This document shows positions 9,675 through 29,318 of a stretch of DNA of 64,000 nucleotides, piece after piece. Position numbers and translations under genes: made by a program. The stretch lies in the IMG/VR virus record IMGVR_UViG_3300042541_001760, positions 62,001-126,000 of that record, one strand, 5' to 3'. Within the stretch, counting starts at the first letter, position 1. Every line of letters starts with the position of its first letter. The notes beneath the pieces were generated by a model that was given only the letters and a program-made list of their open reading frames with translations, did no database searches and was not told where the DNA came from.

Positions 9675-9727
9675 ATAACTTTTTTACATAAATATCCGAT
9701 TTATTTTGTTTTTTCAAATATCTATTG

Positions 9728-9763: not shown

Positions 9764-10156
9764 GGGTCCAAAATTGGTATCGACTGGCATAGTTGGATAT
9801 TAAGAGCATACCGAGGCTGAGTTAACCTTGTAAAACTGACTTAAACCGATATACGGCAACGTAATCAACAAACTTTCGGCAGTCGGACTTGTTCGCACTT
9901 CTGAAACCGTAGCAGTAGCCTAAGGCGAATCTACAACGGGTCGGCGTACATACAACCTAGGAACAGAAGTACTTGCAAAAGGTGTGGTTTCTATCTAAAA
10001 AGAAACATGTGGAGGATTAGTTCTCAGTAAACCGAACCACTTTAAAAATAAGGGAATTGTGAAGTTTCGGATTGGTTAGAAAACCAATGTCCTATGTATG
10101 TAGAACTTAGTAATCAATATGAACAACACGAGGGTTCGAATCCCTCTGGATCCACC
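9764..10156 (+). ncRNA. ssrA: tmRNA
   Basis: Acceptor stem GGGTCCA/TGGATCC with G3.U70, discriminator A, T-arm GAGGG-TTCGAAT-CCCTC; tag ORF 9855-9923 GNVINKLSAVGLVRTSETVAVA*. Confidence 0.92.
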
Positions 10157-10159
10157 TCT

Positions 10160-14564: not shown

Positions 14565-16019
14565 ATGAAAATATTAGTATCGGAAAGTCAATACAAAAGA
14601 TTAGTTGAGAGTTTATTAGATGAATCCATTTTAATTATAGGTGATAGTCATAGCGTAGATGCAGGATTCACTTACTCAAGTTTATTAAAGAAAAAATTTT
14701 CGGATGTAAAAATATCAGCATCGGTTGGCCAAGGAACATCTTGGATGAAATCAGAATTAGCTAGAGAGTTAACCAAAAAACATTACGATAAAGTTATAAT
14801 TTGGGGTGGGAACAACGATATTGGTTCAACCTCCTCTATATCTGGAGCAATATCAAACATACAACAAATGGTTAATATGGTTAACTCACAAGACGGTCAA
14901 TCATATGTAATCATTGGTTTTGACCAAGAAGTTTTTACCAAAAAAGTAAAAAATAAAATGAGAGAAAGATATATAGATTTGCAAAAACAGTTATCTAGTG
15001 AGATAAGTAATGCCGTAATAATTCCTGCCTTTGATATTGATAACTCTTACACATCAGATAATGTACACGGAAATAAGAGTGCTCACGAAAAAGTTTTTAG
15101 AACCGTTACGGAGTATCTACAAAAAACAACACAAAAAGAAAAACAAAAAGATGAAAGTAAAAATTCTGAAACGTTAATGTCAAGATTAGAAGATTATTTG
15201 GATTCTGGTTTAGAATTAGTTGCAAGAAAACGAGGTTCAATGGTTTATGAAAAAGAAGTTGAGGATATACAAACCGCTCTCCAATTTTTAGGGTTTTCTT
15301 TACCTAAGTGGGGTGTAGATGGAAAATTTGGGCCAGAAACAAAAAAAGCAACTGAAAACTTCCAAGAAGAAAATGATTTGGAAGTGACAGGAATTTTTTC
15401 AATCAAAGATTTTGAAAAACTTATTGATGTTTTGGAATCAAAGGGTGTTACTGATGAAGATTTCATGAATGTTCAGAAAAACAAAACAGAAGAGTTATCA
15501 TCAGATTTTGAATCGACGGATTTTGAAACAATTGAAAATTCTGGAATTCAAGTTAGTAAATACCCAAATGATATCGAAAATAGATTACAGGATATTTTAG
15601 GTAAAGAAAAATTCAATATATTTGTTTCCAAGTGTCGAGGAATTGGGTTAGACCCTTTGATTGCAATTAGACAACTTTATACAGAATCTGTCGGTTTTAG
15701 TCCTGACGTTTTGACTTGTAAAAGAAAATCACCTGCGGGAGCCATGGGAATTGCTCAATTTATGCCGGGTACTTGGCCAAGTTATGGTAAAGGTAGTCCA
15801 TGCAATGTCGATGACGCATTGGACGCTTATATTAGGTTTATGGATTATTTACTAAAAAGATATGAAGGTCGAGTAGATCTGGCAGTTGCGTCATATAATA
15901 GTGGTCCAAACTTAAATATATATAAGAAAACATATAACTCAAATACACCTTTCGCATCACTTAAAGGTAAAATACCAGGAGAAACATATAAATACGCATC
16001 CACAATTCTACAAGCATAA
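14565..16019 (+). CDS. SGNH/GDSL esterase + PG-binding + lytic transglycosylase (SLT) protein
   Basis: IIGDSHS, GGNND, DNVH (SGNH); GVDGKFGPET; ES...GAMGIAQFMPGTW...YNSG (SLT). Confidence 0.85.
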   Translation: MKILVSESQYKRLVESLLDESILIIGDSHSVDAGFTYSSLLKKKFSDVKISASVGQGTSWMKSELARELTKKHYDKVIIWGGNNDIGSTSSISGAISNIQQMVNMVNSQDGQSYVIIGFDQEVFTKKVKNKMRERYIDLQKQLSSEISNAVIIPAFDIDNSYTSDNVHGNKSAHEKVFRTVTEYLQKTTQKEKQKDESKNSETLMSRLEDYLDSGLELVARKRGSMVYEKEVEDIQTALQFLGFSLPKWGVDGKFGPETKKATENFQEENDLEVTGIFSIKDFEKLIDVLESKGVTDEDFMNVQKNKTEELSSDFESTDFETIENSGIQVSKYPNDIENRLQDILGKEKFNIFVSKCRGIGLDPLIAIRQLYTESVGFSPDVLTCKRKSPAGAMGIAQFMPGTWPSYGKGSPCNVDDALDAYIRFMDYLLKRYEGRVDLAVASYNSGPNLNIYKKTYNSNTPFASLKGKIPGETYKYASTILQA

Positions 16020-16390
16020 AAAAAGGGTTATCACCGAAGTAACAACCCTTTAAGGCTATTGGTTTTGGTGGATGGGTTTCCAATAAACCCAAGTGTAATG
16101 TTAGTGACACATCACTCTCGATACGTTCGACCACGAGACGGATATTTTAATCGGTTAACTAAAACCAATGATTCTGTCCTTTTTGTTAACTCTAAAGGAC
16201 AACGTGAGTAACATATCATCTCACGTATTAAAGAGTAACGATTTTTTTGTTTTACGGGTATGGGGTGTAAAACTATTTAAACCATCGAAAAAAATAAAAG
16301 ACCCCACAGAATAAATTTATTTAATCTTTTAATTTAACCTCCTAAAGAGACGGCTTTATTCTATATTCCGTCAAAAAAACGAGTCACTTG

Positions 16391-16465
16391 TTGCGGGAGC
16401 AGGAATCGAACCTGCGTGGTTGAGCTTATGAGACTCAGCTGGATCCGTCTCCAGTCTACCCCGCC
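16391..16465 (-). tRNA. tRNA-Met (CAT), initiator-like 1:72 mismatch
   Basis: GGCGGGG/TCCCGCA acceptor, TGAGT-CTCATAA-GCTCA anticodon arm, GCAGG-TTCGATT-CCTGC. Confidence 0.85.
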
Positions 16466-16466
16466 T

Positions 16467-17300
16467 TGGCTTACGTTGAGATTACACGTTTTAGTAGAAA
16501 TCTTTGATGGGATTATTGTTTCCCCACGTATCCACCATCTTTTGAATGGTAATTTCCAGTGATGGTCTTTTAGGTGTACCACTCCTTGAATTTCTAACTA
16601 CTCTCCTACTAATCCGTTCTCTTCAAACTTGCGGTCTGATTAGGTCTTCGACAACCTAGAGATTTTTCATAAGAATACATTCTGACTTGCGGTCTTCGTG
16701 TGCAATGGACATCCCATTACTATGTAATCACCTTTCGTTAGAAACTGATAGACACTTTTGCTTTCTTTTTAAATTTTTAGTAAAAAAATCGAGTTATGTG
16801 TTGTGGATGTATCAAAGTAGTGGTCTACCGTAAGCTTCGTCGTCTTTTGAACAACAAAATACTAAACTACTTCGTGAAGTGTCCCCACCTCCATACTTTA
16901 AGATAACTTCGTAACAAGATTTTGGTAAATCTTTGATAAGGACAGTAGCGACACCACTCGTTCTCTATCTTACCTTTCGGTTTTAAGTTATCTTTCATAT
17001 TGGAACACGCAATTGTATCGTTGGAGCGATAGTTCTCGCAATATTCCTATGGGTTATTCTTATTGGTGTTCCCACCTCAACTTGACAATCCACATTGCCT
17101 TGTCACCCAACCACTTTCTCTAAAGCGTCGCCCTCAATACTGAAGGTCAGGTGATATCCCACTTGTGTACTCAAGTTCAGTTACCTGAACCGCAAACTCA
17201 CTTACACTTGTGAATCCACTTTATCCTACTTTCGTAGTTTATTTAACGACCATACACGGCCGACTATCTTTATGTTTTACCGAAATAAAACAATGGATAA
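16467..17300 (-). ncRNA. Large structured ncRNA, GOLLD-like (~830 nt)
   Basis: No credible ORF, GC-richer, many minus-strand tetraloop hairpins (CTAC-GAAA-GTAG, GTTCAG-GTAA-CTGAAC, ACC-GAAA-GGT, GAC-CGCAA-GTC), abuts tRNA; size and phage/tRNA context match GOLLD; ends approximate. Confidence 0.7.
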
Positions 17301-17427
17301 TATTTTTTATGTCAAAGAACAATAATCATTTTTACTAATTAGAACTATGCTACTGACGGCTTAATTAGGGGTTCTCACCGCTCTAAAATGTCAGGTTCAC
17401 ACCAGACCTCCTTTTCTAATTGTTTGA

Positions 17428-17662
17428 CAAAGGTAGTAAATAAATTTCATTTGTCAAGCAATTTTTTAATTTTTTTTCGTCACCCCCACCCTATTAAACC
17501 TAAACTTTATAACTTAAATACTGATAGGGTGGGGTAACTCTCAAATCTTTTACAAATGTAGGAAGAATTTTCGTTACTTCCAAATTTATTTTATGATTTT
17601 TTATGATATTTTTAAAGAACTGATTTGAATCAAATGTCTGTCTCAAATCCTCTACAAATGTA
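17428..17662 (-). promoter_or_regulatory. Three tandem Bacteroidota-type promoters driving the ncRNA/tRNA unit
   Basis: TACATTTG (17662-17655), TACATTTG (17560-17553), TACCTTTG (17435-17428); boxA-like GTTCTTT at 17620 and 17320. Confidence 0.65.
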
Positions 17663-17775
17663 GTAATAAGTTTTTGAATTACCAAACCATAACCGGAAAT
17701 TATTTTTAGAATTGACTTTATGGTTTATTACATCTATATTCTGGTACGTTAATAAACCATTAAAACTAATTAAAA

Positions 17776-17958
17776 ATGAAAAATGTATTTTATGTATTTG
17801 CTTTAGCATCTTCTCTATTCTTCTCTTCTTGTGGTGGATCCACAGAAGAACAACCTGTAGCATCTGATTCAACGATGGTTGATTCTTGCTCAGTTGACAC
17901 TTGTAAAGTTGATACTTGTAAGGTAGGTAGTGTTAAAGTGGATACTATTAAAAAGTAA
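17776..17958 (+). CDS. Small lipoprotein with D-S/T repeats
   Basis: Signal peptide ending LFFSS-C; DSTMVDSCSVDTCKVDTCKV. Confidence 0.7.
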   Translation: MKNVFYVFALASSLFFSSCGGSTEEQPVASDSTMVDSCSVDTCKVDTCKVGSVKVDTIKK

Positions 17959-19177: not shown

Positions 19178-19498
19178 TTATTGTTTAAATATGTTTACAA
19201 AACCTGTGATGGTTAGTGTTACACCAGCAACAAACATAATATTATTTGGTGTATTTAAAAAAATGTTAGGTTTAACGTAGGTTGAAGTGTATGAATTTTT
19301 AAAAGATGAGTAACTACTTACCCACTCTCCATCCGCCCTATTTTGGAGAATGGCGGCAGTTAATAAACTACCACCACTAACCGTTAGTACCAAAGACACA
19401 TTTTTGTTTTTTGAAACAGTCATATGTTGAGCCTCTGTGTTACCACAAAGACCCAACACTAACAACAAGACAAAAATAACTATTTTAAAGTTTTTCAT
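19178..19498 (-). CDS. Hypothetical membrane protein
   Basis: Signal peptide and hydrophobic segments. Confidence 0.6.
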   Translation of the reverse strand: MKNFKIVIFVLLLVLGLCGNTEAQHMTVSKNKNVSLVLTVSGGSLLTAAILQNRADGEWVSSYSSFKNSYTSTYVKPNIFLNTPNNIMFVAGVTLTITGFVNIFKQ

Positions 19499-20546
19499 AT
19501 TTCGGTTTGATTAATTTCCATATTATGGATGAATAATCTTTCTTGTCCCACATTGAGAACATAACCGAATGTAGTTCTTTCTTTATATATTTTTGAACGA
19601 ACTCAGCAAATTCTTTCTTTGTGGGTTCAGGATAAACATCACCATACTTACCATATCTAAATCCGTCGTGATTTTTACCGCAATACTCAGATATTTGGAA
19701 ATGATTGTATTTCAAATCTCTAGCATACACTTTTATCTTATGGAAAAACTCATCAGGGACATCTTTAAGTATTTCATTTATGTCATCACCTGAACTCAAT
19801 ACATCCCAAACAGATGTGGTGGATACATTGGTCATTATTTTATGTAAACGAAGATACTCAGCACCTTTTATCTTCATTCGGTTACCATTAGAGAATTTAA
19901 CAACGAATCCCTCCTCATTACTATTTATCAAATCCTTCAAAGTGGAGTAATCACTGATGCCGTCATATTTTTTAACCAGTTTGAAACCTATATTGGATAT
20001 TAGATTTTTATGTCTTATATCCTCGTCATCACCATCGTGTAATTTAACCTCATACCCTGTCTTGGTATTTATCATACCCAATAACACCAAATCTTCAAAT
20101 GGGTATTTTACCACTATACGATTCTGGTTATATATGATTTCAAAAAGGTAAGTATAATCTTTATGAAGTTTATCAAAATCGTAGTTAAACATCATCTCAT
20201 ACCCTTTAACCGCTTGATCGGAAGTAAATGACCCACGAGTTGCCATTATCCAACCACCTTCATAATAGAAGAATATACCCAAAGACCCATCCATCTTTTC
20301 ATAAACATCAAAATCTGAAGTTGGGGTATGTTTACCCTCATCCATATTAAAGAATTTCTTGAATGGTCTGGCAACGATATTTCCCTTATCGTCAGTAACA
20401 AGACCGCGAGTTTGTAGGGTAACATCATTCCATAAACCTTCATATTGGACTTTCTCAGAATAGTTCCATATAGTCAAAGGGAGGGTTGGATGTACTTGTT
20501 TGTACACCAACCCGTCATCATAATATGTGTTAAGTTTATTCACCAT
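19485..20546 (-). CDS. T4 Rnl1-like RNA ligase
   Basis: RPFKKFFN, motif I EKMDGSLG, ATRGSF, FEII, EGFVV, KIK. Confidence 0.88.
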   Translation of the reverse strand: MVNKLNTYYDDGLVYKQVHPTLPLTIWNYSEKVQYEGLWNDVTLQTRGLVTDDKGNIVARPFKKFFNMDEGKHTPTSDFDVYEKMDGSLGIFFYYEGGWIMATRGSFTSDQAVKGYEMMFNYDFDKLHKDYTYLFEIIYNQNRIVVKYPFEDLVLLGMINTKTGYEVKLHDGDDEDIRHKNLISNIGFKLVKKYDGISDYSTLKDLINSNEEGFVVKFSNGNRMKIKGAEYLRLHKIMTNVSTTSVWDVLSSGDDINEILKDVPDEFFHKIKVYARDLKYNHFQISEYCGKNHDGFRYGKYGDVYPEPTKKEFAEFVQKYIKKELHSVMFSMWDKKDYSSIIWKLIKPKYEKL

Positions 20547-20745: not shown

Positions 20746-20758
20746 ATTTTTTATTTAG

Positions 20759-20832
20759 TGGGCCATCTTGGACTCGAACCAAGGACTTGCGGATTATGAG
20801 TCCGATACTCTAACCAACTGAGTTAAAAGCCC
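20759..20832 (-). tRNA. tRNA (CAT), probably Ile2 (lysidine type), possibly elongator Met
   Basis: GGGCTTT/ATGGCCC acceptor, CGGA-CTCATAA-TCCG, CTTGG-TTCGAGT-CCAAG. Confidence 0.85.
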
Positions 20833-20862
20833 TAATTATTTTACAAATATACAATTTTATTT

Positions 20863-20997
20863 TTAATCCTCCAAATCCAAATCGTCAAATCTATTATTTT
20901 TTTGTGGTTTAGATTTGGAGGTTTTAACCTTTTTACTTTGATTGTTACTTTTTGACTTAGGTTGGTCGTTCTTCTGACTACGATATGTCTTGCCCAT
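20863..20997 (-). CDS. Small Lys-rich peptide (44 aa)
   Basis: MGKTYRSQKNDQPKSK...DLED*, below ORF-track cutoff. Confidence 0.5.
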   Translation of the reverse strand: MGKTYRSQKNDQPKSKSNNQSKKVKTSKSKPQKNNRFDDLDLED

Positions 20998-21011
20998 TTT
21001 TAATTTAATTA

Positions 21012-21686
21012 TTATCCTACGATTCCTTTAATATCATCTGTGTGGTGGTCAAATCCCATTTCAGAACTGATTGGTTGTTTATCCAACATAGGAACAACCT
21101 CAGTCATTAGGTTATATGGTCTGAATTCAGGGTGACCATCCATTCCAACATCCATTCTCTTACCATTACCAAATCGTTTATCTGTCGGCAAGTGACAATG
21201 CCCGTGAAGGTGACCAATACCCTTGTTTAATCCATCCCAAGATGAAATTGGGTAGTGCATAATGACAAATTTATTTGAACCCATTATTAGTTCAGTATAT
21301 TGGTCAACACTTTTAAATAGACCCCTAACTCCGTCTTTATTGTTACTGATATGGTGGTCGTGATTACCAAGAGTTAGGTGAATGTTTTTACACACAAGTC
21401 GATCCCAAAATTTACGAATGTTCTCAAAACCACCAAAACTCCAATCACCAAGGTGAATTAGAATATCATCCTGACCCACAACCTCATTGATATTACGAAC
21501 AATAGTGTCATTCATTTCATCAAGAGATGAAAAATCACGAGTTTGGTCAACAGGAATAGTTCCATCAGCCAATCTCCAATCTGTAACACCCCTACAAATA
21601 TTTTTATGACCGAAGTGAGTGTCGGAAGTAATCCAAACATTTGGAAAACGACCTTTACTATCTGCGGTTATTTTAATTGGTTTCAT
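21012..21686 (-). CDS. Calcineurin-like metallophosphoesterase
   Basis: SDTHFGH, HLGD, GNHD, HGHCH, DVGMD. Confidence 0.85.
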   Translation of the reverse strand: MKPIKITADSKGRFPNVWITSDTHFGHKNICRGVTDWRLADGTIPVDQTRDFSSLDEMNDTIVRNINEVVGQDDILIHLGDWSFGGFENIRKFWDRLVCKNIHLTLGNHDHHISNNKDGVRGLFKSVDQYTELIMGSNKFVIMHYPISSWDGLNKGIGHLHGHCHLPTDKRFGNGKRMDVGMDGHPEFRPYNLMTEVVPMLDKQPISSEMGFDHHTDDIKGIVG

Positions 21687-21964
21687 AGTTTTGTTTTTTC
21701 GTGTGATATGTACTTGTATTTCTTAACACTTTTTGAAATTAATGTTCCATTCTTCCTAACAAGATCCCAATCTTCATTTATATAAATGTAATCATAATAG
21801 ACGACATTTATGGTATCTCTTTTTTTATCTAAATGGATTATTTCAAGTTTATCCGAATAAATGGCTTTATTACCTGTCATATTAGGATTACAGGTTTGTA
21901 TTGTTATGAAGAATGTCAATAACAATCCTGTTAAGAAAATGTATTTTAAAAATTTAGAAGACAT
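21683..21964 (-). CDS. Hypothetical exported protein
   Basis: N-terminal hydrophobic segment; ATGA overlap with next gene. Confidence 0.55.
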   Translation of the reverse strand: MSSKFLKYIFLTGLLLTFFITIQTCNPNMTGNKAIYSDKLEIIHLDKKRDTINVVYYDYIYINEDWDLVRKNGTLISKSVKKYKYISHEKTKL

Positions 21965-22166
21965 ATGCGATTAATTGGAATACTGCGATTATGGTTAATA
22001 GTAATGAAGTGCCAAATAAAAACATTTGAATTAGAATTGACATTGATGAGTATTTACCGTTTCTTGGGGATATGAAGTTTCTTAGCATTTTTAGTTTATT
22101 TTAGTTTGTCAAAGGTAATATAAATAATCGGTTAAAACAAATTTTTTGTGGATGGAGTAGGAAACA

Positions 22167-22469
22167 TTATCCCCATCCCCTATTAAAACCAACCTTTTCT
22201 TCATCACGACCAATTGACTGAGTAATTAACATATGTTTTGTAACATCTTCAGGACTCAACCAACCAACAACATCGTTATTATCTGAAGTCCATATCTCAA
22301 AGGTATTGACACCATCACCATATAAACCCTGAGACCCACCAACAACGGATATTGAATGTCCGTTTGGAAAATCCAATGTCGCTTGAACTCCACCCCTACT
22401 ATTTGGGTGGGGATTAAAGACCAAATCATCAAATGTTTTTACTTTAAATTTTTCAAAAAAATCTTTCAT
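22167..22469 (-). CDS. Hypothetical phage protein
   Basis: 100 aa ORF, FPNGHSISVV...LYGDG..TFE. Confidence 0.65.
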   Translation of the reverse strand: MKDFFEKFKVKTFDDLVFNPHPNSRGGVQATLDFPNGHSISVVGGSQGLYGDGVNTFEIWTSDNNDVVGWLSPEDVTKHMLITQSIGRDEEKVGFNRGWG

Positions 22470-22644
22470 AATATAGTTTTTAAATTGTTAGTATCCCTTT
22501 ATTTGTTGGATTTTAGTACCAACACCCAATCTCGTAACTACTGATGCGGATAATTCACCCGTTACCGTTTGATTGGACTGAGTGGCTTCACTAGTAACGT
22601 CAACCAAATTATCTGTTGTTAACGTTTAACCCCCACTCTTGTTG

Positions 22645-22728
22645 TGATCAGGACAGGATTCGAACCTGCTTTAGGGCTTACGACCTATGATAATCTATTT
22701 ACGACAACAACCATGTCGCCACCTGACC
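22645..22728 (-). ncRNA. tRNA-like RNA lacking a canonical anticodon arm
   Basis: GGTCAGG/CCTGATC acceptor and GCAGG-TTCGAAT-CCTGT T-arm intact; no 5-bp/7-nt anticodon arm. Confidence 0.65.
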
Positions 22729-22948
22729 ATTTCCCCACCTTGAGATTATTGGTGAGTAGTTATTTCGGTTTTTTCTTCTGTTCCAAAACCTGTGAGGCGT
22801 CCCTCGTGAAAACAGTCAATCCTTACTTGGAAGCTAGCGGATAAGCTAACTTTGACTCCAATGAGTAGTCAATTAAAGCTGATACTACCAAACACTTACC
22901 TATTGTTTAAGTCTTAAGTTAAAGACTCTGAGTATCTCTTACTCATTG

Positions 22949-23036
22949 TGGGTAGAGAGGGACTCGAACCCCCGATGTTTTGTCATATGACCTTTGATCT
23001 ACAATCAAAGCCGTTCGCCGCTACGGTAACCTACCC
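22949..23036 (-). tRNA. tRNA-Tyr (GTA)
   Basis: GGGTAGG/TCTACCC, TTTGA-TTGTAGA-TCAAA, long variable arm, T-arm. Confidence 0.88.
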
Positions 23037-23148
23037 GACGTTAAAAAATAGGAAAATAGAAGATGGGCGAGTGGACATCTATTTTTATGATTAGCATTAC
23101 TTGGATTCACCTCCACCAATAATGGTATTCCCTAATCAACCTATCAAG

Positions 23149-23220
23149 AGGGTGGTGAGGGATTCAAACCCCCGTTGTTCTCCTTTGCAGGGAGATGCCT
23201 AATCGCTCGACCAACCACCC
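23149..23220 (-). tRNA. tRNA-Cys (GCA)
   Basis: GGGTGGT/ACCACCC, U73, TCTCC-CTGCAAA-GGAGA; T-loop TTTGAAT. Confidence 0.85.
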
Positions 23221-23261
23221 TTTTAAACACCCCCAACATTAAGTCAGGGGTGTTGATTTTT

Positions 23262-24089
23262 TTAATTAATGTTATACATCATATTTGACCCATTACCTGT
23301 CATTACACTTGGTAATGTTCCGTTCCACTTATCAAGATACATTTTCTTAAGTAGTTCAGGTGTCAAGTTACGTTGTTGTAGTTCATAAGCCTTAGCCTCT
23401 GATTGCGCCCGAATTACCATTTGTGCGGAGTCACCTCTTGCCACTGCGATTTTTTGGTTAGCCTGAGCAACTGAGATTTTAACCTTATTTTCCTCAGTTT
23501 GTGCGTTCTGAACCGCCCGATTCTTTAGAGTAATTGACTCAACCAATGCCGGTGGTGGTGTCAGATTACTTGTTAATTGAGCCAATAGGAATCCTTTTGG
23601 TTTAACTTGAGCAATGAATCTCTGTCGTACTGTATTCTCAAAAAGTTGTCGATTCATTAGTAAACTATCGGGAGTAAAATCCCCCGCAGTTGAACGAAAC
23701 GCTTCTAACATACAGGTCTTTAAGAATCCATCCTCAATTTCGGGTAGGTCTCGTCGGAACGTCTCAAAGATAGAACTTACCGAATCTGAAATTACACTAT
23801 AGTTGATGGCGGGAATTGCAGTAAAGATAGTTCCACCCTTCATAGTTACCTCAATGGTGTCATACTCCTTGTGTTGTACATAAGTCGGCCACTCATATAC
23901 TTGACTCATCCACGGAATATAGAATTGCCATCCCGTTACTAATTCTGTTTTACTAACACCTTTTTCAGATGCGGTGTTGTTTACTTTAATACCTACGTGA
24001 CCTGCGTCAATTCGCTCACAAGAAGCGGGAATAAACATTAAAAAGGATCCGAGGACTACGAACAATGCAATTATTTTAATTTTTGACAT
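23262..24089 (-). CDS. SPFH/band 7/prohibitin-domain membrane protein
   Basis: N-terminal TM, RIDAGHVGIKV, AQ-rich coiled coil, KWNGTLP. Confidence 0.85.
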   Translation of the reverse strand: MSKIKIIALFVVLGSFLMFIPASCERIDAGHVGIKVNNTASEKGVSKTELVTGWQFYIPWMSQVYEWPTYVQHKEYDTIEVTMKGGTIFTAIPAINYSVISDSVSSIFETFRRDLPEIEDGFLKTCMLEAFRSTAGDFTPDSLLMNRQLFENTVRQRFIAQVKPKGFLLAQLTSNLTPPPALVESITLKNRAVQNAQTEENKVKISVAQANQKIAVARGDSAQMVIRAQSEAKAYELQQRNLTPELLKKMYLDKWNGTLPSVMTGNGSNMMYNIN

Positions 24090-24288
24090 TTTGGTTTGGT
24101 TTGTTTTTATTGATTAGTGAAGTTAGAAAATTTACTGTTTGATAAAATGCGAATCCGATTATACATAACCCTATGATTACTGTGGGGGTATCAGGTTGGG
24201 TACATAGGTATACTCCCGATATGGCAATCAAACCTAATAGGATTAATTTTGAAATTGTGTCCCATAAGGGATCATTAATTAGTTTCAT
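24076..24288 (-). CDS. Small membrane protein
   Basis: Two TM segments, upstream of SPFH gene. Confidence 0.55.
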   Translation of the reverse strand: MKLINDPLWDTISKLILLGLIAISGVYLCTQPDTPTVIIGLCIIGFAFYQTVNFLTSLINKNKPNQNVKN

Positions 24289-24349
24289 ATAAATTGGTTT
24301 TAGATTGTTTGACAAAGATACAAAATTAATTCAATAAACCAAAATTATT

Positions 24350-24583
24350 TTAATAATCCTTATCGTCGTCGTATGATTTAATATTTGCGAGTTCAATATT
24401 TAACCTCTTAACCTCATCGTTTAATAGTTTAATATCTTCCAATCTTTCTTTCAAAACAGAAAATGAATAATTAATTATTTCTTTTTCTGAATCTGTTAAA
24501 TCTTCTTTTTTTATTAAGAGATAATTTAACACACCGTCAGTATATTCTTCTTTGGGGGTTTTGAATAAACTATCTTTCATCAT
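24350..24583 (-). CDS. Hypothetical protein
   Basis: 77 aa ORF. Confidence 0.55.
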   Translation of the reverse strand: MMKDSLFKTPKEEYTDGVLNYLLIKKEDLTDSEKEIINYSFSVLKERLEDIKLLNDEVKRLNIELANIKSYDDDKDY

Positions 24584-24586
24584 ATT

Positions 24587-24820
24587 TTAAAAAATTGAAT
24601 GGTCTCCGTGACTATTATCCCATTCATCAGGAATATAAGGATTGGTGTTAATAGGTTCGGGTTGGATTGTGTCAGAAATAACACATAATAGATCCAATCC
24701 CTCTGACTGAGCGGAATCCGATTGGTAAATACTTTCACCATATGGATATTTGCTAAAGTAAGCATCAAGAAGATTTACAACTTCCGTTATTTTTTGGTTG
24801 TTCCAATTAATATTATACAT
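24587..24820 (-). CDS. Hypothetical protein
   Basis: 77 aa ORF downstream of tRNA-Thr. Confidence 0.55.
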   Translation of the reverse strand: MYNINWNNQKITEVVNLLDAYFSKYPYGESIYQSDSAQSEGLDLLCVISDTIQPEPINTNPYIPDEWDNSHGDHSIF

Positions 24821-24839
24821 TGTTATGGGGTTTTTTAAG

Positions 24840-24923
24840 AGCCGAGGGCCGGATTCGAACCGGCGAGGACTTAATGTCTCCTGATTACAAATCAGGTGTA
24901 ATCAACCACTATACGACCTCGGC
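24840..24923 (-). tRNA. tRNA-Thr (TGT) with long variable arm
   Basis: GCCGAGG/CCTCGGC, CCTGA-TTTGTAA-TCAGG, GCCGG-TTCGAAT-CCGGC. Confidence 0.88.
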
Positions 24924-24933
24924 TTATTTTTAG

Positions 24934-25007
24934 TGATCCCGATTGGATTCGAACCAATGACCTACGCATTAGAAGTGCGTTGCTCTATCCTGCTGAGCTA
25001 CGGAACC
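24934..25007 (-). tRNA. tRNA-Arg (TCT)
   Basis: GGTTCCG/CGGGATC, ACGCA-CTTCTAA-TGCGT. Confidence 0.92.
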
Positions 25008-25014
25008 ATATTAT

Positions 25015-25191
25015 TTAAATCTTTCTCACTTCATACTTATAACCACTATCAGAATTTTTCTCCATAATATCTCTCATCTTATCCGCTTCCTCAAAAGTAT
25101 CAAATTCTAAGACCTCATTATGGGTATCAATTATAATAACCGGCATTTCAACACCTTTATTGTTTTTAATGAATTTTAAAATTACGTACAT
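25015..25191 (-). CDS. Small hypothetical protein (58 aa) between tRNAs
   Basis: MYVILKFIKNNKGVEMPVII...EVRKI*; TACCTTTG promoter just upstream. Confidence 0.6.
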   Translation of the reverse strand: MYVILKFIKNNKGVEMPVIIIDTHNEVLEFDTFEEADKMRDIMEKNSDSGYKYEVRKI

Positions 25192-25275
25192 ACTCCACTA
25201 TTAATTATCGTTTTATTTTGTTTTACAAAGGTAATATAAATTTATCAAAACTACAACATCTTTATATTTTTTTTG

Positions 25276-25350
25276 TACTCCCGACGGGGGTCGAACCCGC
25301 AATTTCCACCTTGAAAGAGTGGCGGCTTAAACCAATTCGCCTACAGGAGC
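25276..25350 (-). tRNA. tRNA-Glu (TTC)
   Basis: GCTCCTG/CGGGAGT, CCACT-CTTTCAA-GGTGG. Confidence 0.9.
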
Positions 25351-25404
25351 ATTTGTGAGTACAAAGATACAAAAACATTTCAAAGAACAAAACTTATTTA
25401 AAAC

Positions 25405-26280: not shown

Positions 26281-26778
26281 ATGGAAAGGGTTTTAGTATT
26301 AAATTCGGATTATACCCCTCTGAACGTAACTACTATGATCAGAGGATTCAATTTGGTTAATAAAGGTAAGGCGGAGATTCTAAAGGCAGGAGATAAACCC
26401 ATATTAACAGGAGAACAAACATTTACAAGACCCTTAATTATAAGGTTATTTACTTATATTAAATACAGAGTTAAAAATCTTAAAGTTAGTAGAAGTCGTT
26501 TATATAAAAGAGATGGTCATAAATGTTCATACTGTGGGTCACCAAAGAATTTAACAATAGACCACGTAATACCAAAATCTAAAGGCGGAACAAATAGATG
26601 GACTAATTTAATTACCTGTTGCGGGTCTTGTAACAGGAAAAAAGGTAACAAAACACCCGAAGAAGCGGGAATGACATTAAACATAATACCATATGAGCCT
26701 TCATTATTTTCGGAGGTGTTTCACAATTCAATTGAAGCGGTATGGAACGAATTTCAAAAAACAATGGGTTTCAAATGA
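26281..26778 (+). CDS. HNH endonuclease
   Basis: RDGHKCSYCG..LTIDHVIPKSKGG..W.NLITCC..CN.KK. Confidence 0.9.
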   Translation: MERVLVLNSDYTPLNVTTMIRGFNLVNKGKAEILKAGDKPILTGEQTFTRPLIIRLFTYIKYRVKNLKVSRSRLYKRDGHKCSYCGSPKNLTIDHVIPKSKGGTNRWTNLITCCGSCNRKKGNKTPEEAGMTLNIIPYEPSLFSEVFHNSIEAVWNEFQKTMGFK

Positions 26779-29318
26779 AAAAACTACTTATATCACTTAA
26801 TTTAATATTACTTTCGTTTGTTGGGTTCTCCCAAAATGATTGTATGGGATTTCAAAGTTCGATTGTTAATCCCTTACCTGTTGGTGGGGGTTATGCTCCC
26901 GGAACTGTGGTTCAATATTGTGTTACATACAATAATTGGAATACTAATTTAGGTGCTAATTGGTGTGAAGGATTTAACATTACAATCGGACCTGGTTGGG
27001 TACCGGGTTCAATAACTTCAGTAACCCTACCAAATAACTTAAATGGTGGAAATGGTCAATGGTTGTGGGTTCCGGGGACATTTAATGGAGATCCAGGTTC
27101 ATCAGGTGGTGCGGGAAATAACTTTGGACCGGGGTTCTTTTTTGATGAAGATAGTGATGGTATAACTAATAATGATTGGGGTGATTTTGGAACAGGTCCT
27201 TGGACTTTTTGTTTTAGTGTTACGGCAGGCGCGGTGGCAGGAACATCATTATCTTTACAGGTCTCACCCGTTAGTGATGGGTATGCCGGAAGTTGGGGTA
27301 ACGCAGGGTGTAACGGAGAATATCAATATCAATTATCACCCGGTAGTACGGTATTAGGTTGTATTGTTCCACCTCTTGTAACACAATCATCAGTTACCGA
27401 CGCTACTTGTAGTGGATTCGCTGATGGATCCTTTAATGTTGTGGGGTCAAATGGGGTCTCTCCTTACACTTATTATGTAAATGGTGTCGTAACACCAATG
27501 CCTGTAAATAATGTCCTTGCGGGGGTTTATGTGGTGTCTTGTGAAGATGATAATGGGTGTGTTAGTTTACCAATCAATGTTACCGTGGGTGAAAACACAA
27601 CGGTGGTTAATAATACCTCACAATTACAAGATAATGTTTGTTTTGGGGAATCCAATGGTAGTTTTACAATAAGTTCTGTTAATGGTTTATTACCTTACAC
27701 ATATACCTTAAACGGTGGTTCAAATAACACGGGAACATTCACGAACTTAACCGCAGGAAATTATGTTGTAAATGTTTCGGATGATAATGGTTGTAATACC
27801 AATCACAATGTAACTATAACCGAACCAACCCAACTAACAAACACGATACCCGTTATAACTGACATTGATTGTTTCGGAAATACTAATGGAACAATATCGG
27901 TTACCGCAAATAACGGAACACCACCTTATATATACACCTTAAATGGGGTAACAAATAACACAGGTAGTTTTACAAACTTGGGTGCGGGTACTTACTCTAT
28001 GGATATCACCGACGATAACGGTTGTCAGATAATCATCCCAAGTATTGTTGTGTCAGGTCCGGCTCAACCATTACAAGGTAATCTATCTACGGTACAACCA
28101 ACTTGTTTTGGGTATTCAGATGGGTCAATATCGTCAGTTGTTATTGGTGGAACTCCTCCATATACTTATCTTTGGAATAACTTACAAATAACGTCACTAA
28201 TAACCAATTTATCTTCGGGGTGGTACCAAGTTGTGGTAACTGACGATAATCTTTGTCAGACAACATTAACTCATCAATTGGGTCAGCCTATGAGGATTGA
28301 TTTAACTGGTATTAATTCAGAGGTTATTTGTTTTGGTGAGGATGTTTACATATCGGTTAGTCAGATAAATGCCGTTACACCATATAATATTGTTTGGGCT
28401 AATTCAGTAAACGCAACAACTAACAATAATGATATTTGGGTTGTTCCCCCATCCGATGTAACTTATACATCAACACTAACTGATAATAATGGTTGTATGG
28501 CAACACATAATTTTAATGTTACTGTAAATCCATTACCTGACCCATCCTTCACCCAAAGTGATATAACAGGATGTAATCCCAAGTGTATTGATTTCTCAAT
28601 TATAAACCCTAACCCTAATTATATTTACGATTGGACTATGGGTACTGGATCTGATCGTAGTGGTGACATCATTAAATATTGTTATCCTATGGATGGTACC
28701 TATGATGTCAGAGTAATTGCCACCACAAATTTGGGATGTAAGGATACCTTATTTAAACCTAATCATATTATAATTAATCTGTCACCTGTTGCTCAATTTT
28801 CAATATCACCTGAGAGTGTAACTGACATTATGTCACCTTATTTTGAATTTGGTAACCTATCTAAGGACGCGATGTCATATTTTTGGAGTTTTGACGATTC
28901 TCAGACATCAATAGATGAAAATACCGAACATACTTATATTTCTCCTGGTGAGTATTGCGTTAAATTAATTGCCACCACAACTTTTAGTTCGGGAATACCA
29001 ACTTGTGTTGATTCTATTATTAATTGTGTCACCATTAATCCATTATCAGTTTTATATATACCAAATGCGTTTACACCAAATGGTGATAATACCAATGATT
29101 ACTTTTATGTTAGTTCGTCAAGGATATATGATTATCATTTAACAATTTATAATAAGTGGGGTACTAAAATATTCCAAACATACGATTTGGATGCCACTTG
29201 GGACGGTACTTATGGTACAAGTATTGTAGAGGATGGTGTGTATTCTTATTTTGTGAGTTATAGGGATGTGGAAATGAGAAAATACGCAAAAAACGGTACG
29301 TTAACTGTATTAAAATAA
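26775..29318 (+). CDS. SprB-repeat/PKD surface protein with T9SS type-B (gliding-motility-associated) C-terminal domain
   Basis: Signal peptide MKKLLISL, repeats C.G..NG.I......G..PY.Y, PKD motifs, C-terminal IPNAFTPNGDNTNDYF...IYNKWG...WDG. Confidence 0.85.
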   Translation: MKKLLISLNLILLSFVGFSQNDCMGFQSSIVNPLPVGGGYAPGTVVQYCVTYNNWNTNLGANWCEGFNITIGPGWVPGSITSVTLPNNLNGGNGQWLWVPGTFNGDPGSSGGAGNNFGPGFFFDEDSDGITNNDWGDFGTGPWTFCFSVTAGAVAGTSLSLQVSPVSDGYAGSWGNAGCNGEYQYQLSPGSTVLGCIVPPLVTQSSVTDATCSGFADGSFNVVGSNGVSPYTYYVNGVVTPMPVNNVLAGVYVVSCEDDNGCVSLPINVTVGENTTVVNNTSQLQDNVCFGESNGSFTISSVNGLLPYTYTLNGGSNNTGTFTNLTAGNYVVNVSDDNGCNTNHNVTITEPTQLTNTIPVITDIDCFGNTNGTISVTANNGTPPYIYTLNGVTNNTGSFTNLGAGTYSMDITDDNGCQIIIPSIVVSGPAQPLQGNLSTVQPTCFGYSDGSISSVVIGGTPPYTYLWNNLQITSLITNLSSGWYQVVVTDDNLCQTTLTHQLGQPMRIDLTGINSEVICFGEDVYISVSQINAVTPYNIVWANSVNATTNNNDIWVVPPSDVTYTSTLTDNNGCMATHNFNVTVNPLPDPSFTQSDITGCNPKCIDFSIINPNPNYIYDWTMGTGSDRSGDIIKYCYPMDGTYDVRVIATTNLGCKDTLFKPNHIIINLSPVAQFSISPESVTDIMSPYFEFGNLSKDAMSYFWSFDDSQTSIDENTEHTYISPGEYCVKLIATTTFSSGIPTCVDSIINCVTINPLSVLYIPNAFTPNGDNTNDYFYVSSSRIYDYHLTIYNKWGTKIFQTYDLDATWDGTYGTSIVEDGVYSYFVSYRDVEMRKYAKNGTLTVLK

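What the first reader, a model, noticed from the sequence alone, without database searches (positions are those of the whole stretch)
16467..17300. ~830-nt ornate ncRNA (GOLLD-like) co-transcribed with tRNA-Met
Seen: a GC-richer block without a credible ORF, with many minus-strand GNRA-type hairpins. It ends in a hairpin ACGT-GTAATCTCA-ACGT about 6 nt before the tRNA-Met 5' end, and this loop can pair with GATTAC upstream. Established: GOLLD RNAs are ~800 nt, occur in phages and lake metagenomes next to tRNAs, and have no known function. The family assignment is my inference from size, context and hairpin style.
Basis: partly seen in the sequence, partly recalled or inferred. Interest (0 to 1): 0.7.

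Follow-up and report, generated by a model that had tools for sequence, protein, structure and literature searches.

The report
GOLLD RNA gene in lake phage
The block is a genuine, highly expressed copy of GOLLD, a known about 800-nt phage RNA that assembles into a 14-copy RNA cage of unknown purpose, sitting 7 nt ahead of an initiator-like tRNA in a 261-kb freshwater phage.

Summary
Rfam's GOLLD model (RF02032) matches window 16473-16874 (minus strand) over its full length at 305.9 bits, against a cut-off of 150. That model covers only the 3' half.

The 5' half (16876-17262) is homologous in 69 other viral contigs. Over the whole RNA, 224 predicted pairs are 95% canonical (slid controls 38-44%), and 165 carry compensatory changes.

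Six lake metatranscriptomes hold the RNA at high depth over about 16490-17284 and nothing in the flanks. DNA runs cover everything evenly. The RNA is therefore about 812 nt, 17284/17286 to 16473.

Two long-range contacts reported in the cryo-EM structure covary without exception here: L20 with the linker flank, and L27 with a GAU at 16530-16532.

An atypical tRNA(CAU) with a mismatched 1:72 pair follows 7 nt after L27. Co-transcription and RNase P release are inferred, not shown.

The host is probably a Bacteroidota bacterium. Function remains unknown.

This is a new member of a known family. One modest new lead is that, in this lineage, GOLLD is preferentially linked to initiator-type tRNA genes.

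The parts
17293..17323 (-). Putative promoter. It has a conserved upstream box GTTCTTTGA (17320-17312) and a -7-like box TATCCATT (17300-17293). A TTG lies at 17323-17321, 20 nt upstream of the -7-like box.
   Evidence: - The box is conserved upstream of GOLLD in most of the 69 related loci.
- The same box plus a TATCTTTG box lies upstream of the tRNA-Glu array at 25388-25380.
- No RNA contig covers it in 6 metatranscriptomes.
- The start site predicted from the -7 box, about 17286, fits the observed end at 17284.
- The promoter role is inferred.
16473..17286 (-). GOLLD RNA, about 812-814 nt, from the 5' end to the L27 hairpin.
   Evidence: - Rfam hit for the 3' half.
- nhmmer homology of both halves in about 80 viral loci.
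- Sharp conservation bounds.
- Covariation.
- RNA-only coverage over 16476-17307.
16876..17262 (-). 5' domain, with 20 covariation-supported helices. It includes invariant GAAA loops at 17233-17230 and 16978-16975.
   Evidence: Helix table and conserved columns. It is homologous in 69 IMG/VR loci and in LR745206.
16473..16874 (-). 3' domain, the part that Rfam RF02032 models.
   Evidence: 305.9 bits, gathering score 150, model positions 1-416 of 416.
16766..16800 (-). Variable A/U-rich internal linker, with no tRNA nested in it. It is closed by the pseudoknot helix 16829-16823 x 16753-16747.
   Evidence: Identity here drops to 0.46-0.49, with gaps. The closing helix is canonical in 66-70 of 70 sequences and shows several pair types. 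The solved structure has a disordered linker inside the cage.
16684..16694 (-). L20 hairpin. Its loop G16690 pairs with C16760 in the AAAGCAAAAG segment after the linker, which corresponds to bridge B7 of the cryo-EM structure.
   Evidence: Perfect covariation: C-G in 40 sequences and G-C in 30, with no exception. Mutual information is 0.99 bit, and this is the best partner among all columns. The mapping to B7 follows the text of PMC12286853.
16623..16656 (-). L21a hairpin (16656-16644, loop GUCGAA, the CG variant) and L21b hairpin (16640-16623, loop CGCAAG). In the solved structure these are the self-kissing loops that join the two half-cages.
   Evidence: Loop tallies: the L21a core is GC in most relatives and CG in the window and 13 others. 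This matches the GC/CG switch described for bridge B8. The mapping is by model position and is inferred.
16473..16489 (-). L27 terminal hairpin ACGU-GUAAUCUCA-ACGU. Its loop bases AUC (16482-16480) pair with GAU (16532-16530).
   Evidence: The stem has 4 of 4 pairs with compensatory changes. Position 16482 x 16530 is A-U in 44 sequences, U-A in 23 and G-C in 3, with no exception. This agrees with L27 pairing to J24/26 in the structure.
16390..16465 (-). tRNA(CAU) gene. It is atypical: G1 x A72 mismatch, an odd D arm, and only one G-C among pairs 29-31:39-41.
   Evidence: ARAGORN. Rfam tRNA score 28.8 bits, just under its cut-off of 29. Comparison with other GOLLD-adjacent tRNA(CAU) genes.
16052..16389 (-). 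Non-coding trailer between the tRNA and the terminator. It is transcribed at least over 16203-16388.
   Evidence: A 186-nt RNA contig with no differences, at depth 260, in run X17 only. The stretch is conserved only in the two closest relatives, L036 and L069. Its fold z-score is -2.1.
16022..16051 (-). Intrinsic-terminator-like hairpin with a T run. It probably ends the GOLLD-tRNA unit and is shared with the convergent lysin gene.
   Evidence: 13-bp stem, UUCG loop, T run.

Best explanation
**Identity.** Window 17286-16473 (minus strand) is a gene for a GOLLD RNA (Rfam RF02032). It is carried by a freshwater phage of at least 261 kb that most likely infects a Bacteroidota host.

**Transcription and processing.** The RNA is transcribed from its own promoter just upstream. 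The promoter has the conserved box GTTCTTTGA and a -7-like box TATCCATT. Transcription probably runs on through the tRNA(CAU) gene 7 nt downstream and a 340-nt trailer, to a terminator at 16051-16022. RNase P cutting at the tRNA 5' end would then release the GOLLD RNA with a short 3' tail.

**Structure and assembly.** The RNA folds into two domains, a lineage-specific 5' domain and the universal 3' domain. By analogy with the solved env-38 GOLLD, it assembles into a homo-14-mer closed RNA cage, with its variable linker inside. What the cage does is not known. I take it to be a self-assembling scaffold or container used during lytic growth and tied to the phage's tRNA and translation genes.

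**Shown.**
- Family membership.
- Both domains conserved, with covariation.
- Conservation of two long-range contacts of the solved structure.
- Abundant stable RNA in nature with sharp bounds.

**Inferred.**
- The strand of the RNA, from the model and the covariation.
- The promoter.
- Co-transcription and the RNase P cut.
- 14-mer assembly.
- Any function.
For: - **Family.** Full-length Rfam match at 305.9 bits, gathering score 150, E 1.3e-86. It is the only GOLLD copy found in the phage record held.
- **Homology.** About 80 IMG/VR loci match across both halves. Conservation starts sharply at about 17265 and stops at 16473.
- **Covariation in 70 sequences.** 224 pairs are 95.3% canonical, against 38-44% for slid controls. 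165 pairs carry double-sided changes (controls 75-88), and extra pair types number 522 (controls 244-301).
- **Long-range pairs.** 16760 x 16690 holds in 70 of 70 sequences and 16482 x 16530 in 70 of 70. They match bridge B7 and the L27-J24/26 contact of the cryo-EM structure.
- **Expression.** Six metatranscriptome runs cover only 16476-17307, at word depths of tens to thousands, with near-identical pieces of 388-733 nt. The flanks read zero, and two DNA runs are flat at 6-14x across all 1.9 kb.
- **5' end.** An Illumina adapter abuts 17284 in two runs. The -7 box predicts a start at about 17286.
- **Junction with the tRNA.** A tRNA starts 8-39 nt after L27 in all six distant GOLLD lineages checked, and within about 8-18 nt in 11 related loci.
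- **Phage and host.** The source is an IMG/VR virus record. The window holds a lysin, a T4-type RNA ligase and a tail-like protein. The Bacteroidota promoter pattern occurs 16 times against 2.4 expected. One protein carries a T9SS CHU_C sorting domain.
Against: - No RNA contig bridges GOLLD and the tRNA, and the tRNA itself has zero RNA coverage. Co-transcription and RNase P processing are therefore unproven.
- Logan contigs carry no strand. Depths sum relatives at 90-95% identity or more.
- The 17284 end comes from two runs of one study. Adapters also abut other positions (16523, 17245, about 17262).
- The promoter does not fit the canonical Bacteroidota TTTG-N17-21-TAnnTTTG pattern. The box GTTCTTTGA is not enriched genome-wide: 4 matches against 4 for the reversed control.
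- 14-mer assembly was not and could not be tested. I did not align the 5' domain to env-38, and 5' domains are known to differ between GOLLD lineages.
- In Lactobacillus brevis, GOLLD was dispensable for phage production (cited in PMC7567579). A strong role therefore cannot be assumed.
Confidence: 0.9

Rival explanations
1. GOLLD here is chiefly a long structured 5' leader of the tRNA(CAU) precursor. On this reading it is a cis-acting element that controls the making, folding or protection of the downstream tRNA, rather than a free-standing RNA machine.
For: - The junction is tight, 7 nt.
- A tRNA follows L27 within 8-39 nt in all six distant lineages and in 12 of the related loci.
- tRNAs are sometimes nested in the linker (L046; PMC12286853).
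Against: - GOLLD accumulates as a stable RNA far above its flanks, while the tRNA and trailer are not seen or are seen in one run only.
- 48 of 66 related loci have no same-strand tRNA within 300 nt downstream.
- About 220 covarying pairs and intermolecular contacts are far more than a leader needs.
Confidence: 0.1
2. It is a decaying or non-functional GOLLD remnant, carried along in a tRNA island without selection.
For: The adjacent tRNA is atypical and scores below Rfam's tRNA cut-off. The 5' variable hairpin present in most relatives is missing here.
Against: - The full-length model match is among the highest seen here: 305.9 bits, against 168-287 for other loci.
- Every helix is intact in the window sequence.
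- The strictly covarying tertiary pairs are kept.
- The RNA is abundant in six metatranscriptomes.
Confidence: 0.02
3. It is a new large RNA family unrelated to GOLLD, or a protein-coding or pseudogene region.
For: None found. A 73-aa ORF overlaps 16361-16582.
Against: Rfam E-value 1.3e-86. No open frame longer than 64 codons. The substitution pattern is compensatory in stems, not codon-like.
Confidence: 0.01
4. The RNA works as a monomer or with proteins, for example as a ribozyme or a ribosome- or protein-binding decoy, and cage formation is not the biologically relevant state for this lineage.
For: - The 5' domain, which forms the cap of the cage in env-38, is lineage-specific.
- Ribosome binding by GOLLD in pull-downs is cited in PMC12286853.
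- No assembly data exist for this lineage.
Against: - The pair 16760 x 16690 covaries perfectly. The structure shows it to be intermolecular.
- L21a keeps a self-complementary dinucleotide in both of its variants, GC or CG, as expected for a self-kissing loop.
- env-38 multimers persist at 12.5 nM.
Confidence: 0.12

Closest known systems
GOLLD RNA (Rfam RF02032). The solved example is env-38, an 833-nt homo-14-mer nanocage (Kretsch et al. 2025, PMC12286853).
   Same: - Full-length match to the 3'-domain model.
- Total length about 812 nt.
- Two-domain build with a variable internal linker.
- L27 loop GUAAUCUCA with its J24/26 pairing.
- L20 x linker-flank pair.
- L21a with a self-complementary core.
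- Phage context beside tRNA genes; env-38 also lies next to a tRNA-Met.
- Strong expression.
   Different: - The tRNA(CAU) lies downstream, 7 nt after L27, where env-38 has it upstream.
- The source is a freshwater phage, probably of Bacteroidota, of at least 261 kb.
- The 5' leader hairpin present in most lineage members is reduced to about 20 nt.
- Homology of the 5' domain to that of env-38 was not tested.
- Multimerisation was not tested.
GOLLD copies in Acinetobacter phages (AM24, Herod and others) and in other IMG/VR lineages (L077, L046, L049, L043, L113).
   Same: The 3' domain matches the same model at 168-225 bits. A tRNA starts 8-39 nt after L27. All lie inside tRNA islands, and two of them have a tmRNA nearby, as the window does.
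   Different: Their 5' halves show no detectable DNA similarity to the window. Their flanking tRNAs are Asp, Glu, Ala, Arg, Asn and Leu, not tRNA(CAU).
ROOL RNA (RF03087) and OLE RNA.
   Same: All are large ornate RNAs that form RNA-only multimers. ROOL is also found in phages near tRNAs and forms a cage, an 8-mer.
   Different: There is no sequence or structure match. cmscan over 15900-17900 at E <= 1 lists neither family. ROOL intertwines its two halves, whereas GOLLD keeps them as separate domains.

Membership tests
GOLLD (RF02032) | Covariance-model match above Rfam's gathering score over the whole model. | tested here: met
   305.9 bits against 150, model positions 1-416 of 416, E 1.3e-86, window 16874-16473 minus strand.
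GOLLD (RF02032) | Conserved 3'-domain secondary structure kept through compensatory changes. | tested here: met
   About 20 helices in 16874-16473 are 88-100% canonical, and almost all carry double-sided changes across 70 sequences. The Rfam outer stem is canonical in 69-70 of 70.
GOLLD (RF02032) | Total size about 800 nt, with a less conserved but structured 5' domain ahead of the universal 3' domain. | tested here: met
   The 5' domain 17262-16876 is homologous in 69 loci and has 20 covarying helices. RNA bounds of about 17284 to 16473 give about 812 nt. It shows no similarity to the 5' halves of Acinetobacter-phage GOLLDs, as expected for a variable domain.
GOLLD (RF02032) | Variable linker inside the 3' domain. 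| tested here: met
   Window about 16800-16766 is A/U-rich, with identity 0.46-0.49 and gaps. It is closed by the covarying helix 16829-16823 x 16753-16747.
GOLLD (RF02032) | L27 terminal loop as a tertiary hub that pairs with J24/26. | tested here: met
   The loop GUAAUCUCA is nearly invariant. Position 16482 x 16530 covaries in 70 of 70 sequences (A-U 44, U-A 23, G-C 3).
GOLLD (RF02032) | L20 kissing interaction with the strand next to the linker (bridge B7). | tested here: met
   16690 x 16760 is G-C or C-G in 70 of 70 sequences, with mutual information 0.99 bit.
GOLLD (RF02032) | Self-complementary core in L21a (bridge B8, GC/CG switch). | tested here: met
   The window loop is GUCGAA (CG). 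Relatives have CGCAAG (GC) in 52 sequences or UCGAA (CG) in 13. Assigning this hairpin as L21a rests on model position against env-38 numbering, which is inferred.
GOLLD (RF02032) | Phage or prophage location near tRNA genes. | tested here: met
   The source is a virus record of 261 kb. There is a tRNA 7 nt downstream, six more tRNAs within 9 kb, and a tmRNA. Phage proteins lie nearby.
GOLLD (RF02032) | Accumulates as a discrete RNA. | tested here: met
   Six metatranscriptomes give RNA-only coverage with sharp bounds, against flat DNA controls. Timing relative to lysis is not testable here.
GOLLD (RF02032) | Homo-14-mer D7 nanocage. | not testable with these tools
   There is only indirect support, from conserved intermolecular contacts.
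ROOL / OLE / other large RNA families | Covariance-model match. | tested here: not met
   No hit at gathering score in the window, or at E <= 1 in 15900-17900.

The most novel reading that the evidence does not exclude
**The reading.** In this freshwater lineage GOLLD is functionally coupled to a phage-encoded initiator-type tRNA. Either the cage is made as, or acts on, GOLLD-tRNA(CAU) precursors, for example by displaying, storing or shielding 14 initiator-like tRNAs. Or it captures host initiation components. Either way the phage would gain control over translation initiation.

**The lead.**
- 26 of 39 same-strand tRNAs within 300 nt of GOLLD are tRNA(CAU), against 18 of 180 elsewhere in the same loci.
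- 23 of 27 of the adjacent ones carry the initiator hallmark of a non-paired 1:72.

**Limits.**
- The link is absent from six other GOLLD lineages.
- The loci are related to one another, so the counts are not independent.
Probability: 0.1. Interest if true: 0.8.

Novelty: new member of a known kind. Interest (0 to 1): 0.4.

Why it matters
**A well-bounded example.** GOLLD is one of the largest bacterial or phage non-coding RNAs. Its structure, a 14-mer RNA cage, is solved, but its function is unknown. This copy adds a well-bounded and clearly expressed example from a large freshwater phage whose host is probably a Bacteroidota bacterium.

**In nature.** The RNA is among the abundant phage transcripts in several independent lake metatranscriptomes.

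**Conserved contacts.** Two of the intermolecular or tertiary contacts seen by cryo-EM are under strict selection in a lineage of 70 sequences. This supports the view that the cage is the selected state.

**Testable leads.**
- A lineage-wide link to initiator-type tRNA(CAU) genes.
- A conserved upstream box shared with the phage's tRNA array.
- A general rule that a tRNA starts within about 40 nt of the L27 hairpin, so that RNase P would set GOLLD's 3' end.

None of this changes what kind of thing it is.

Tried and rejected
All six pairs form in only 4 of 70 sequences. The middle pair is canonical in 14 of 70, and there is no covariation. Rejected.
- **Upstream box paired with the 3' domain.** RNAalifold paired UUCUUUG (17319-17313) with CAAGGAG (16588-16582). 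Support is weak (86% canonical, one double change), and the box is not part of the stable RNA. Rejected as structure; I read the box as a promoter element.
- **Sigma-70 promoter scan.** 8 sites against 6.7 expected, which is uninformative. The Bacteroidota-type pattern is the enriched one.
- **GTTCTTTGA as a genome-wide motif.** 4 matches in 261 kb against 4 for the reversed control. Only the two copies ahead of GOLLD and of the tRNA-Glu array are intergenic.
- **Flanks as part of the RNA.** The trailer 16020-16392 and the upstream stretch 17325-17780 are strongly conserved only in the two closest relatives, with weak partial matches to the upstream stretch in two more loci. They are not part of the family.
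- **ROOL, OLE and all other Rfam families.** No match.
- **fold_alignment on the 70-sequence alignment.** The output was cut before its pair table, so I recomputed the counts and slid controls in Python.
- **Initiator-tRNA link in other lineages.** Not found in six distant GOLLD lineages.
- **Literature.** Searches found no paper giving a function for GOLLD and none linking it to initiator tRNA. Morgado et al. 2020 (PMC7549688) is not held.

Full report
**What is there.** Window 16020-17776 is a 1.75-kb stretch with no convincing ORF. It lies between a convergent lysin gene (14565-16019; GDSL, PG-binding and SLT domains) and small ORFs upstream.

ARAGORN places a tRNA(CAU) at 16390-16465 on the minus strand. 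Rfam's GOLLD model RF02032 matches 16874-16473 on the same strand at 305.9 bits. Its gathering score is 150, the E-value is 1.3e-86, and model positions 1-416 of 416 are covered. A permissive scan of 15900-17900 finds no other large-RNA family.

The window is bases 62001-126000 of a 261-kb IMG/VR virus record that CheckV rates 89% complete. This is the only GOLLD copy in the record held.

**Extent of the RNA.** The Rfam model covers only the universal 3' half. I scanned IMG/VR for a degenerate motif of the 3' domain and compared the loci with nhmmer. About 80 loci are homologous to the window from about 17320/17270 down to 16473, so both halves are shared.

In a MAFFT alignment of 71 unique sequences, identity rises sharply at about 17265. 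It stays at 0.55-0.90 to 16473 and then collapses. The one dip is at 16800-16761, the variable linker.

BLAST against GenBank phages gives a 75%-coverage match in the 635-kb uncultured phage LR745206. Acinetobacter phages match over the 3' half only.

**Structure.** I ran RNAalifold on 70 sequences (alignment A1) and made my own counts.

| Measure | Observed | Controls (3' partner slid 1-3 columns) |
|---|---|---|
| Cells forming a canonical pair (224 pairs in 40 helices) | 95.3% | 38-44% |
| Pairs with double-sided changes | 165 | 75-88 |
| Extra pair types | 522 | 244-301 |

- Twenty of the helices lie in the 5' domain (17262-16876).
- The single-sequence MFE z-score is -4.18.
- A pseudoknot helix, 16829-16823 x 16753-16747, closes the linker. 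It is canonical in 66-70 of 70 sequences, with up to three pair types per position.

**Contacts known from the solved structure.** Kretsch et al. 2025 (PMC12286853) showed the following for the 833-nt env-38 GOLLD.
- It forms a D7 homo-14-mer cage.
- The 5' domains form the caps and the 3' domains form the rings.
- The linker is disordered and lies inside.
- L27 is a tertiary hub that pairs with J24/26.
- L20 kisses J13/15 of a neighbouring chain (bridge B7).
- L21a and L21b are self-kissing loops that join the half-cages, and L21a switches between GC and CG.

In my alignment:
- The L20 loop base 16690 and base 16760, in the AAAGCAAAAG segment after the linker, are G-C in 40 sequences and C-G in 30, with no exception. 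Each is the other's best mutual-information partner.
- L27 base 16482 and base 16530 are A-U in 44 sequences, U-A in 23 and G-C in 3, with no exception.
- The hairpin I map to L21a has a GC core in most sequences and a CG core in the window and 13 others.
I reject it.

**Expression.** Fourteen lake or freshwater DNA runs and six metatranscriptome runs hold the stretch.

- I laid the runs on 15900-17800. The six RNA runs cover only 16476-17307, at word depths from tens to thousands.
- They include near-identical pieces of 388-733 nt: X15 16509-16973 with 2 differences, X16 with 1, X17 with 2, and X19 16510-17242.
- They give zero over 17308-17800, over 16028-16155 and over the tRNA.
- Two DNA runs are flat at 6-14x across the whole stretch. 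This excludes DNA carry-over as the source.
- The outermost 5' piece ends at 17284 with an Illumina adapter attached, in two runs of one study. Other adapter-abutted ends occur at 16523, 17245 and about 17262, so 17284 is a best estimate only.
- Contigs carry no strand, so the strand rests on the model and the covariation.
- One run (X17) also has a 186-nt contig with no differences at 16203-16388, which starts 2 nt after the tRNA. This fits a processed trailer of a longer transcript.

**Promoter and transcription unit.**
- A box GTTCTTTGA (17320-17312) is conserved upstream of GOLLD in most related loci. In most of them a variable UUCG-capped hairpin separates it from the core. In the window that hairpin is reduced to about 20 nt.
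- The only other intergenic copy in the phage lies about 30 nt upstream of the tRNA-Glu that heads the tRNA array (25388-25380). It has a TATCTTTG box at the same spacing as TATCCATT (17300-17293) here.
- The box is not in the stable RNA. If the TATCC box acts like the Bacteroidota -7 element, the start would be at about 17286. My knowledge of the -33 TTG / -7 TAnnTTTG promoter type is from memory.
- No terminator or promoter pattern separates L27 from the tRNA. A terminator-like hairpin lies at 16051-16022.
- The unit I propose is therefore promoter, GOLLD, 7 nt, tRNA(CAU), trailer, terminator, about 1.27 kb in all. RNase P would make GOLLD's 3' end. This is inferred.
- It gains weight from a general pattern. 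A tRNA starts 8-39 nt after L27 in all six distant GOLLD lineages I checked, and within about 8-18 nt in 11 related loci.

**The tRNA.**
- It has a G1 x A72 mismatch, an irregular D arm, and an Rfam tRNA score of 28.8 bits against a cut-off of 29.
- Across the 69 related loci, 26 of 39 same-strand tRNAs within 300 nt of GOLLD are tRNA(CAU). Elsewhere in the same loci the figure is 18 of 180. The odds ratio is 18 and Fisher's p is 6e-13, but the loci are related, so this overstates independence.
- These tRNAs lie either just downstream or 23-276 nt upstream.
- 23 of 27 have an unpaired 1:72 (most often C x A), and 22 of 27 have at least two G-C pairs at 29-31:39-41. These are the hallmarks of bacterial initiator tRNA.
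- Nine of the 19 distant tRNA(CAU) genes are G1-C72.
- env-38 also lies next to a tRNA-Met. The link is absent from the six other lineages.
- I found no paper that mentions it.

**Host and neighbourhood.**
- The Bacteroidota promoter pattern TTTG-N17-21-TAnnTTTG occurs 16 times in the window against 2.4 in shuffles. It lies ahead of the tmRNA, of tRNA-Met 20832 and of the tRNA-Glu array.
- ORF 26742-29318 carries SprB repeats, PKD domains and a CHU_C type IX secretion sorting domain.
- Nearby are a T4 Rnl1-type RNA ligase (19485-20546), a phosphoesterase (21012-21686), six more tRNAs and a tmRNA (9764-10157). GOLLD therefore sits in an island of RNA and translation-maintenance genes.

**Verdict.** This is a genuine, intact and expressed GOLLD RNA gene. 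It is a new member of a known family. The function is still unknown. In Lactobacillus brevis the RNA accumulates during lytic growth but is dispensable (cited in PMC7567579). The most useful by-products are the precise transcript bounds, the strict conservation of cage contacts, and the lineage-specific link to initiator-type tRNA genes.

Noticed in passing
window 9764-10157 (+): A phage-encoded tmRNA (Rfam 83.2 bits, cut-off 47), which ARAGORN did not call. A Bacteroidota-type promoter pattern starts at 9705. Two distant GOLLD loci (L043, L049) also carry a tmRNA 600-1100 nt upstream of their GOLLD.
   Followed up: partly
window 20758-25350 (-): A tRNA island with Met(CAU), Tyr, Cys, Thr, Arg and Glu. 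The Met at 20758-20832 is a G1-C72 elongator- or Ile2-like type, unlike the one next to GOLLD.
   Followed up: partly
window 25380-25388 (-) and 17312-17320 (-): The box GTTCTTTGA is followed 10-12 nt later by TATC(T/C)nT(T/G). This arrangement occurs only ahead of the tRNA-Glu array and ahead of GOLLD. It may be a promoter type this phage uses for stable-RNA genes.
   Followed up: partly
window 19485-20546 (-) and 21012-21686 (-): A T4 Rnl1-type RNA ligase (PF09511 at 3.8e-16; phrog_562 at 1.8e-66) and a phosphoesterase (phrog_547). They flank tRNA-Met 20758-20832 and look like a tRNA-repair pair.
   Followed up: no
window 26742-29318 (+): An 858-aa protein with SprB repeats, PKD domains and a CHU_C type IX secretion sorting domain. 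It points to a Bacteroidota host.
   Followed up: no
window 17553-17584 (-) and 17655-17686 (-): Two similar copies of a canonical Bacteroidota promoter pattern (TTTGG...CTACATTTG) point towards GOLLD. After them come a long hairpin (about 17483-17533) and a palindrome, TTGACAAA...TTTGTCAA (about 17425-17458). No RNA contig covers any of this in six metatranscriptomes.
   Followed up: partly
window 16203-16388 (-): A 186-nt RNA contig identical to the window, at depth 260, in one metatranscriptome (X17) only. It starts 2 nt after the tRNA 3' end. This may be a processed trailer or a separate small RNA. It is conserved only in L036 and L069, and its fold z-score is -2.1.
   Followed up: partly
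window 16823-16829 x 16747-16753 (-): A covarying pseudoknot helix closes the GOLLD linker. It is not part of the structure line Rfam printed for the model.
   Followed up: yes
L046:636-1077, with a tRNA-like match at 713-775: A distant GOLLD with a tRNA-like element nested in its linker, as the literature describes for some members. ARAGORN did not call it.
   Followed up: no
L124 (Acinetobacter phage Herod, MW316732: 26253-26621): A GOLLD 3' domain (225 bits) lies unannotated between tRNA-Asn and tRNA-Asp in a cultured, sequenced phage. This could serve as an experimental system.
   Followed up: partly
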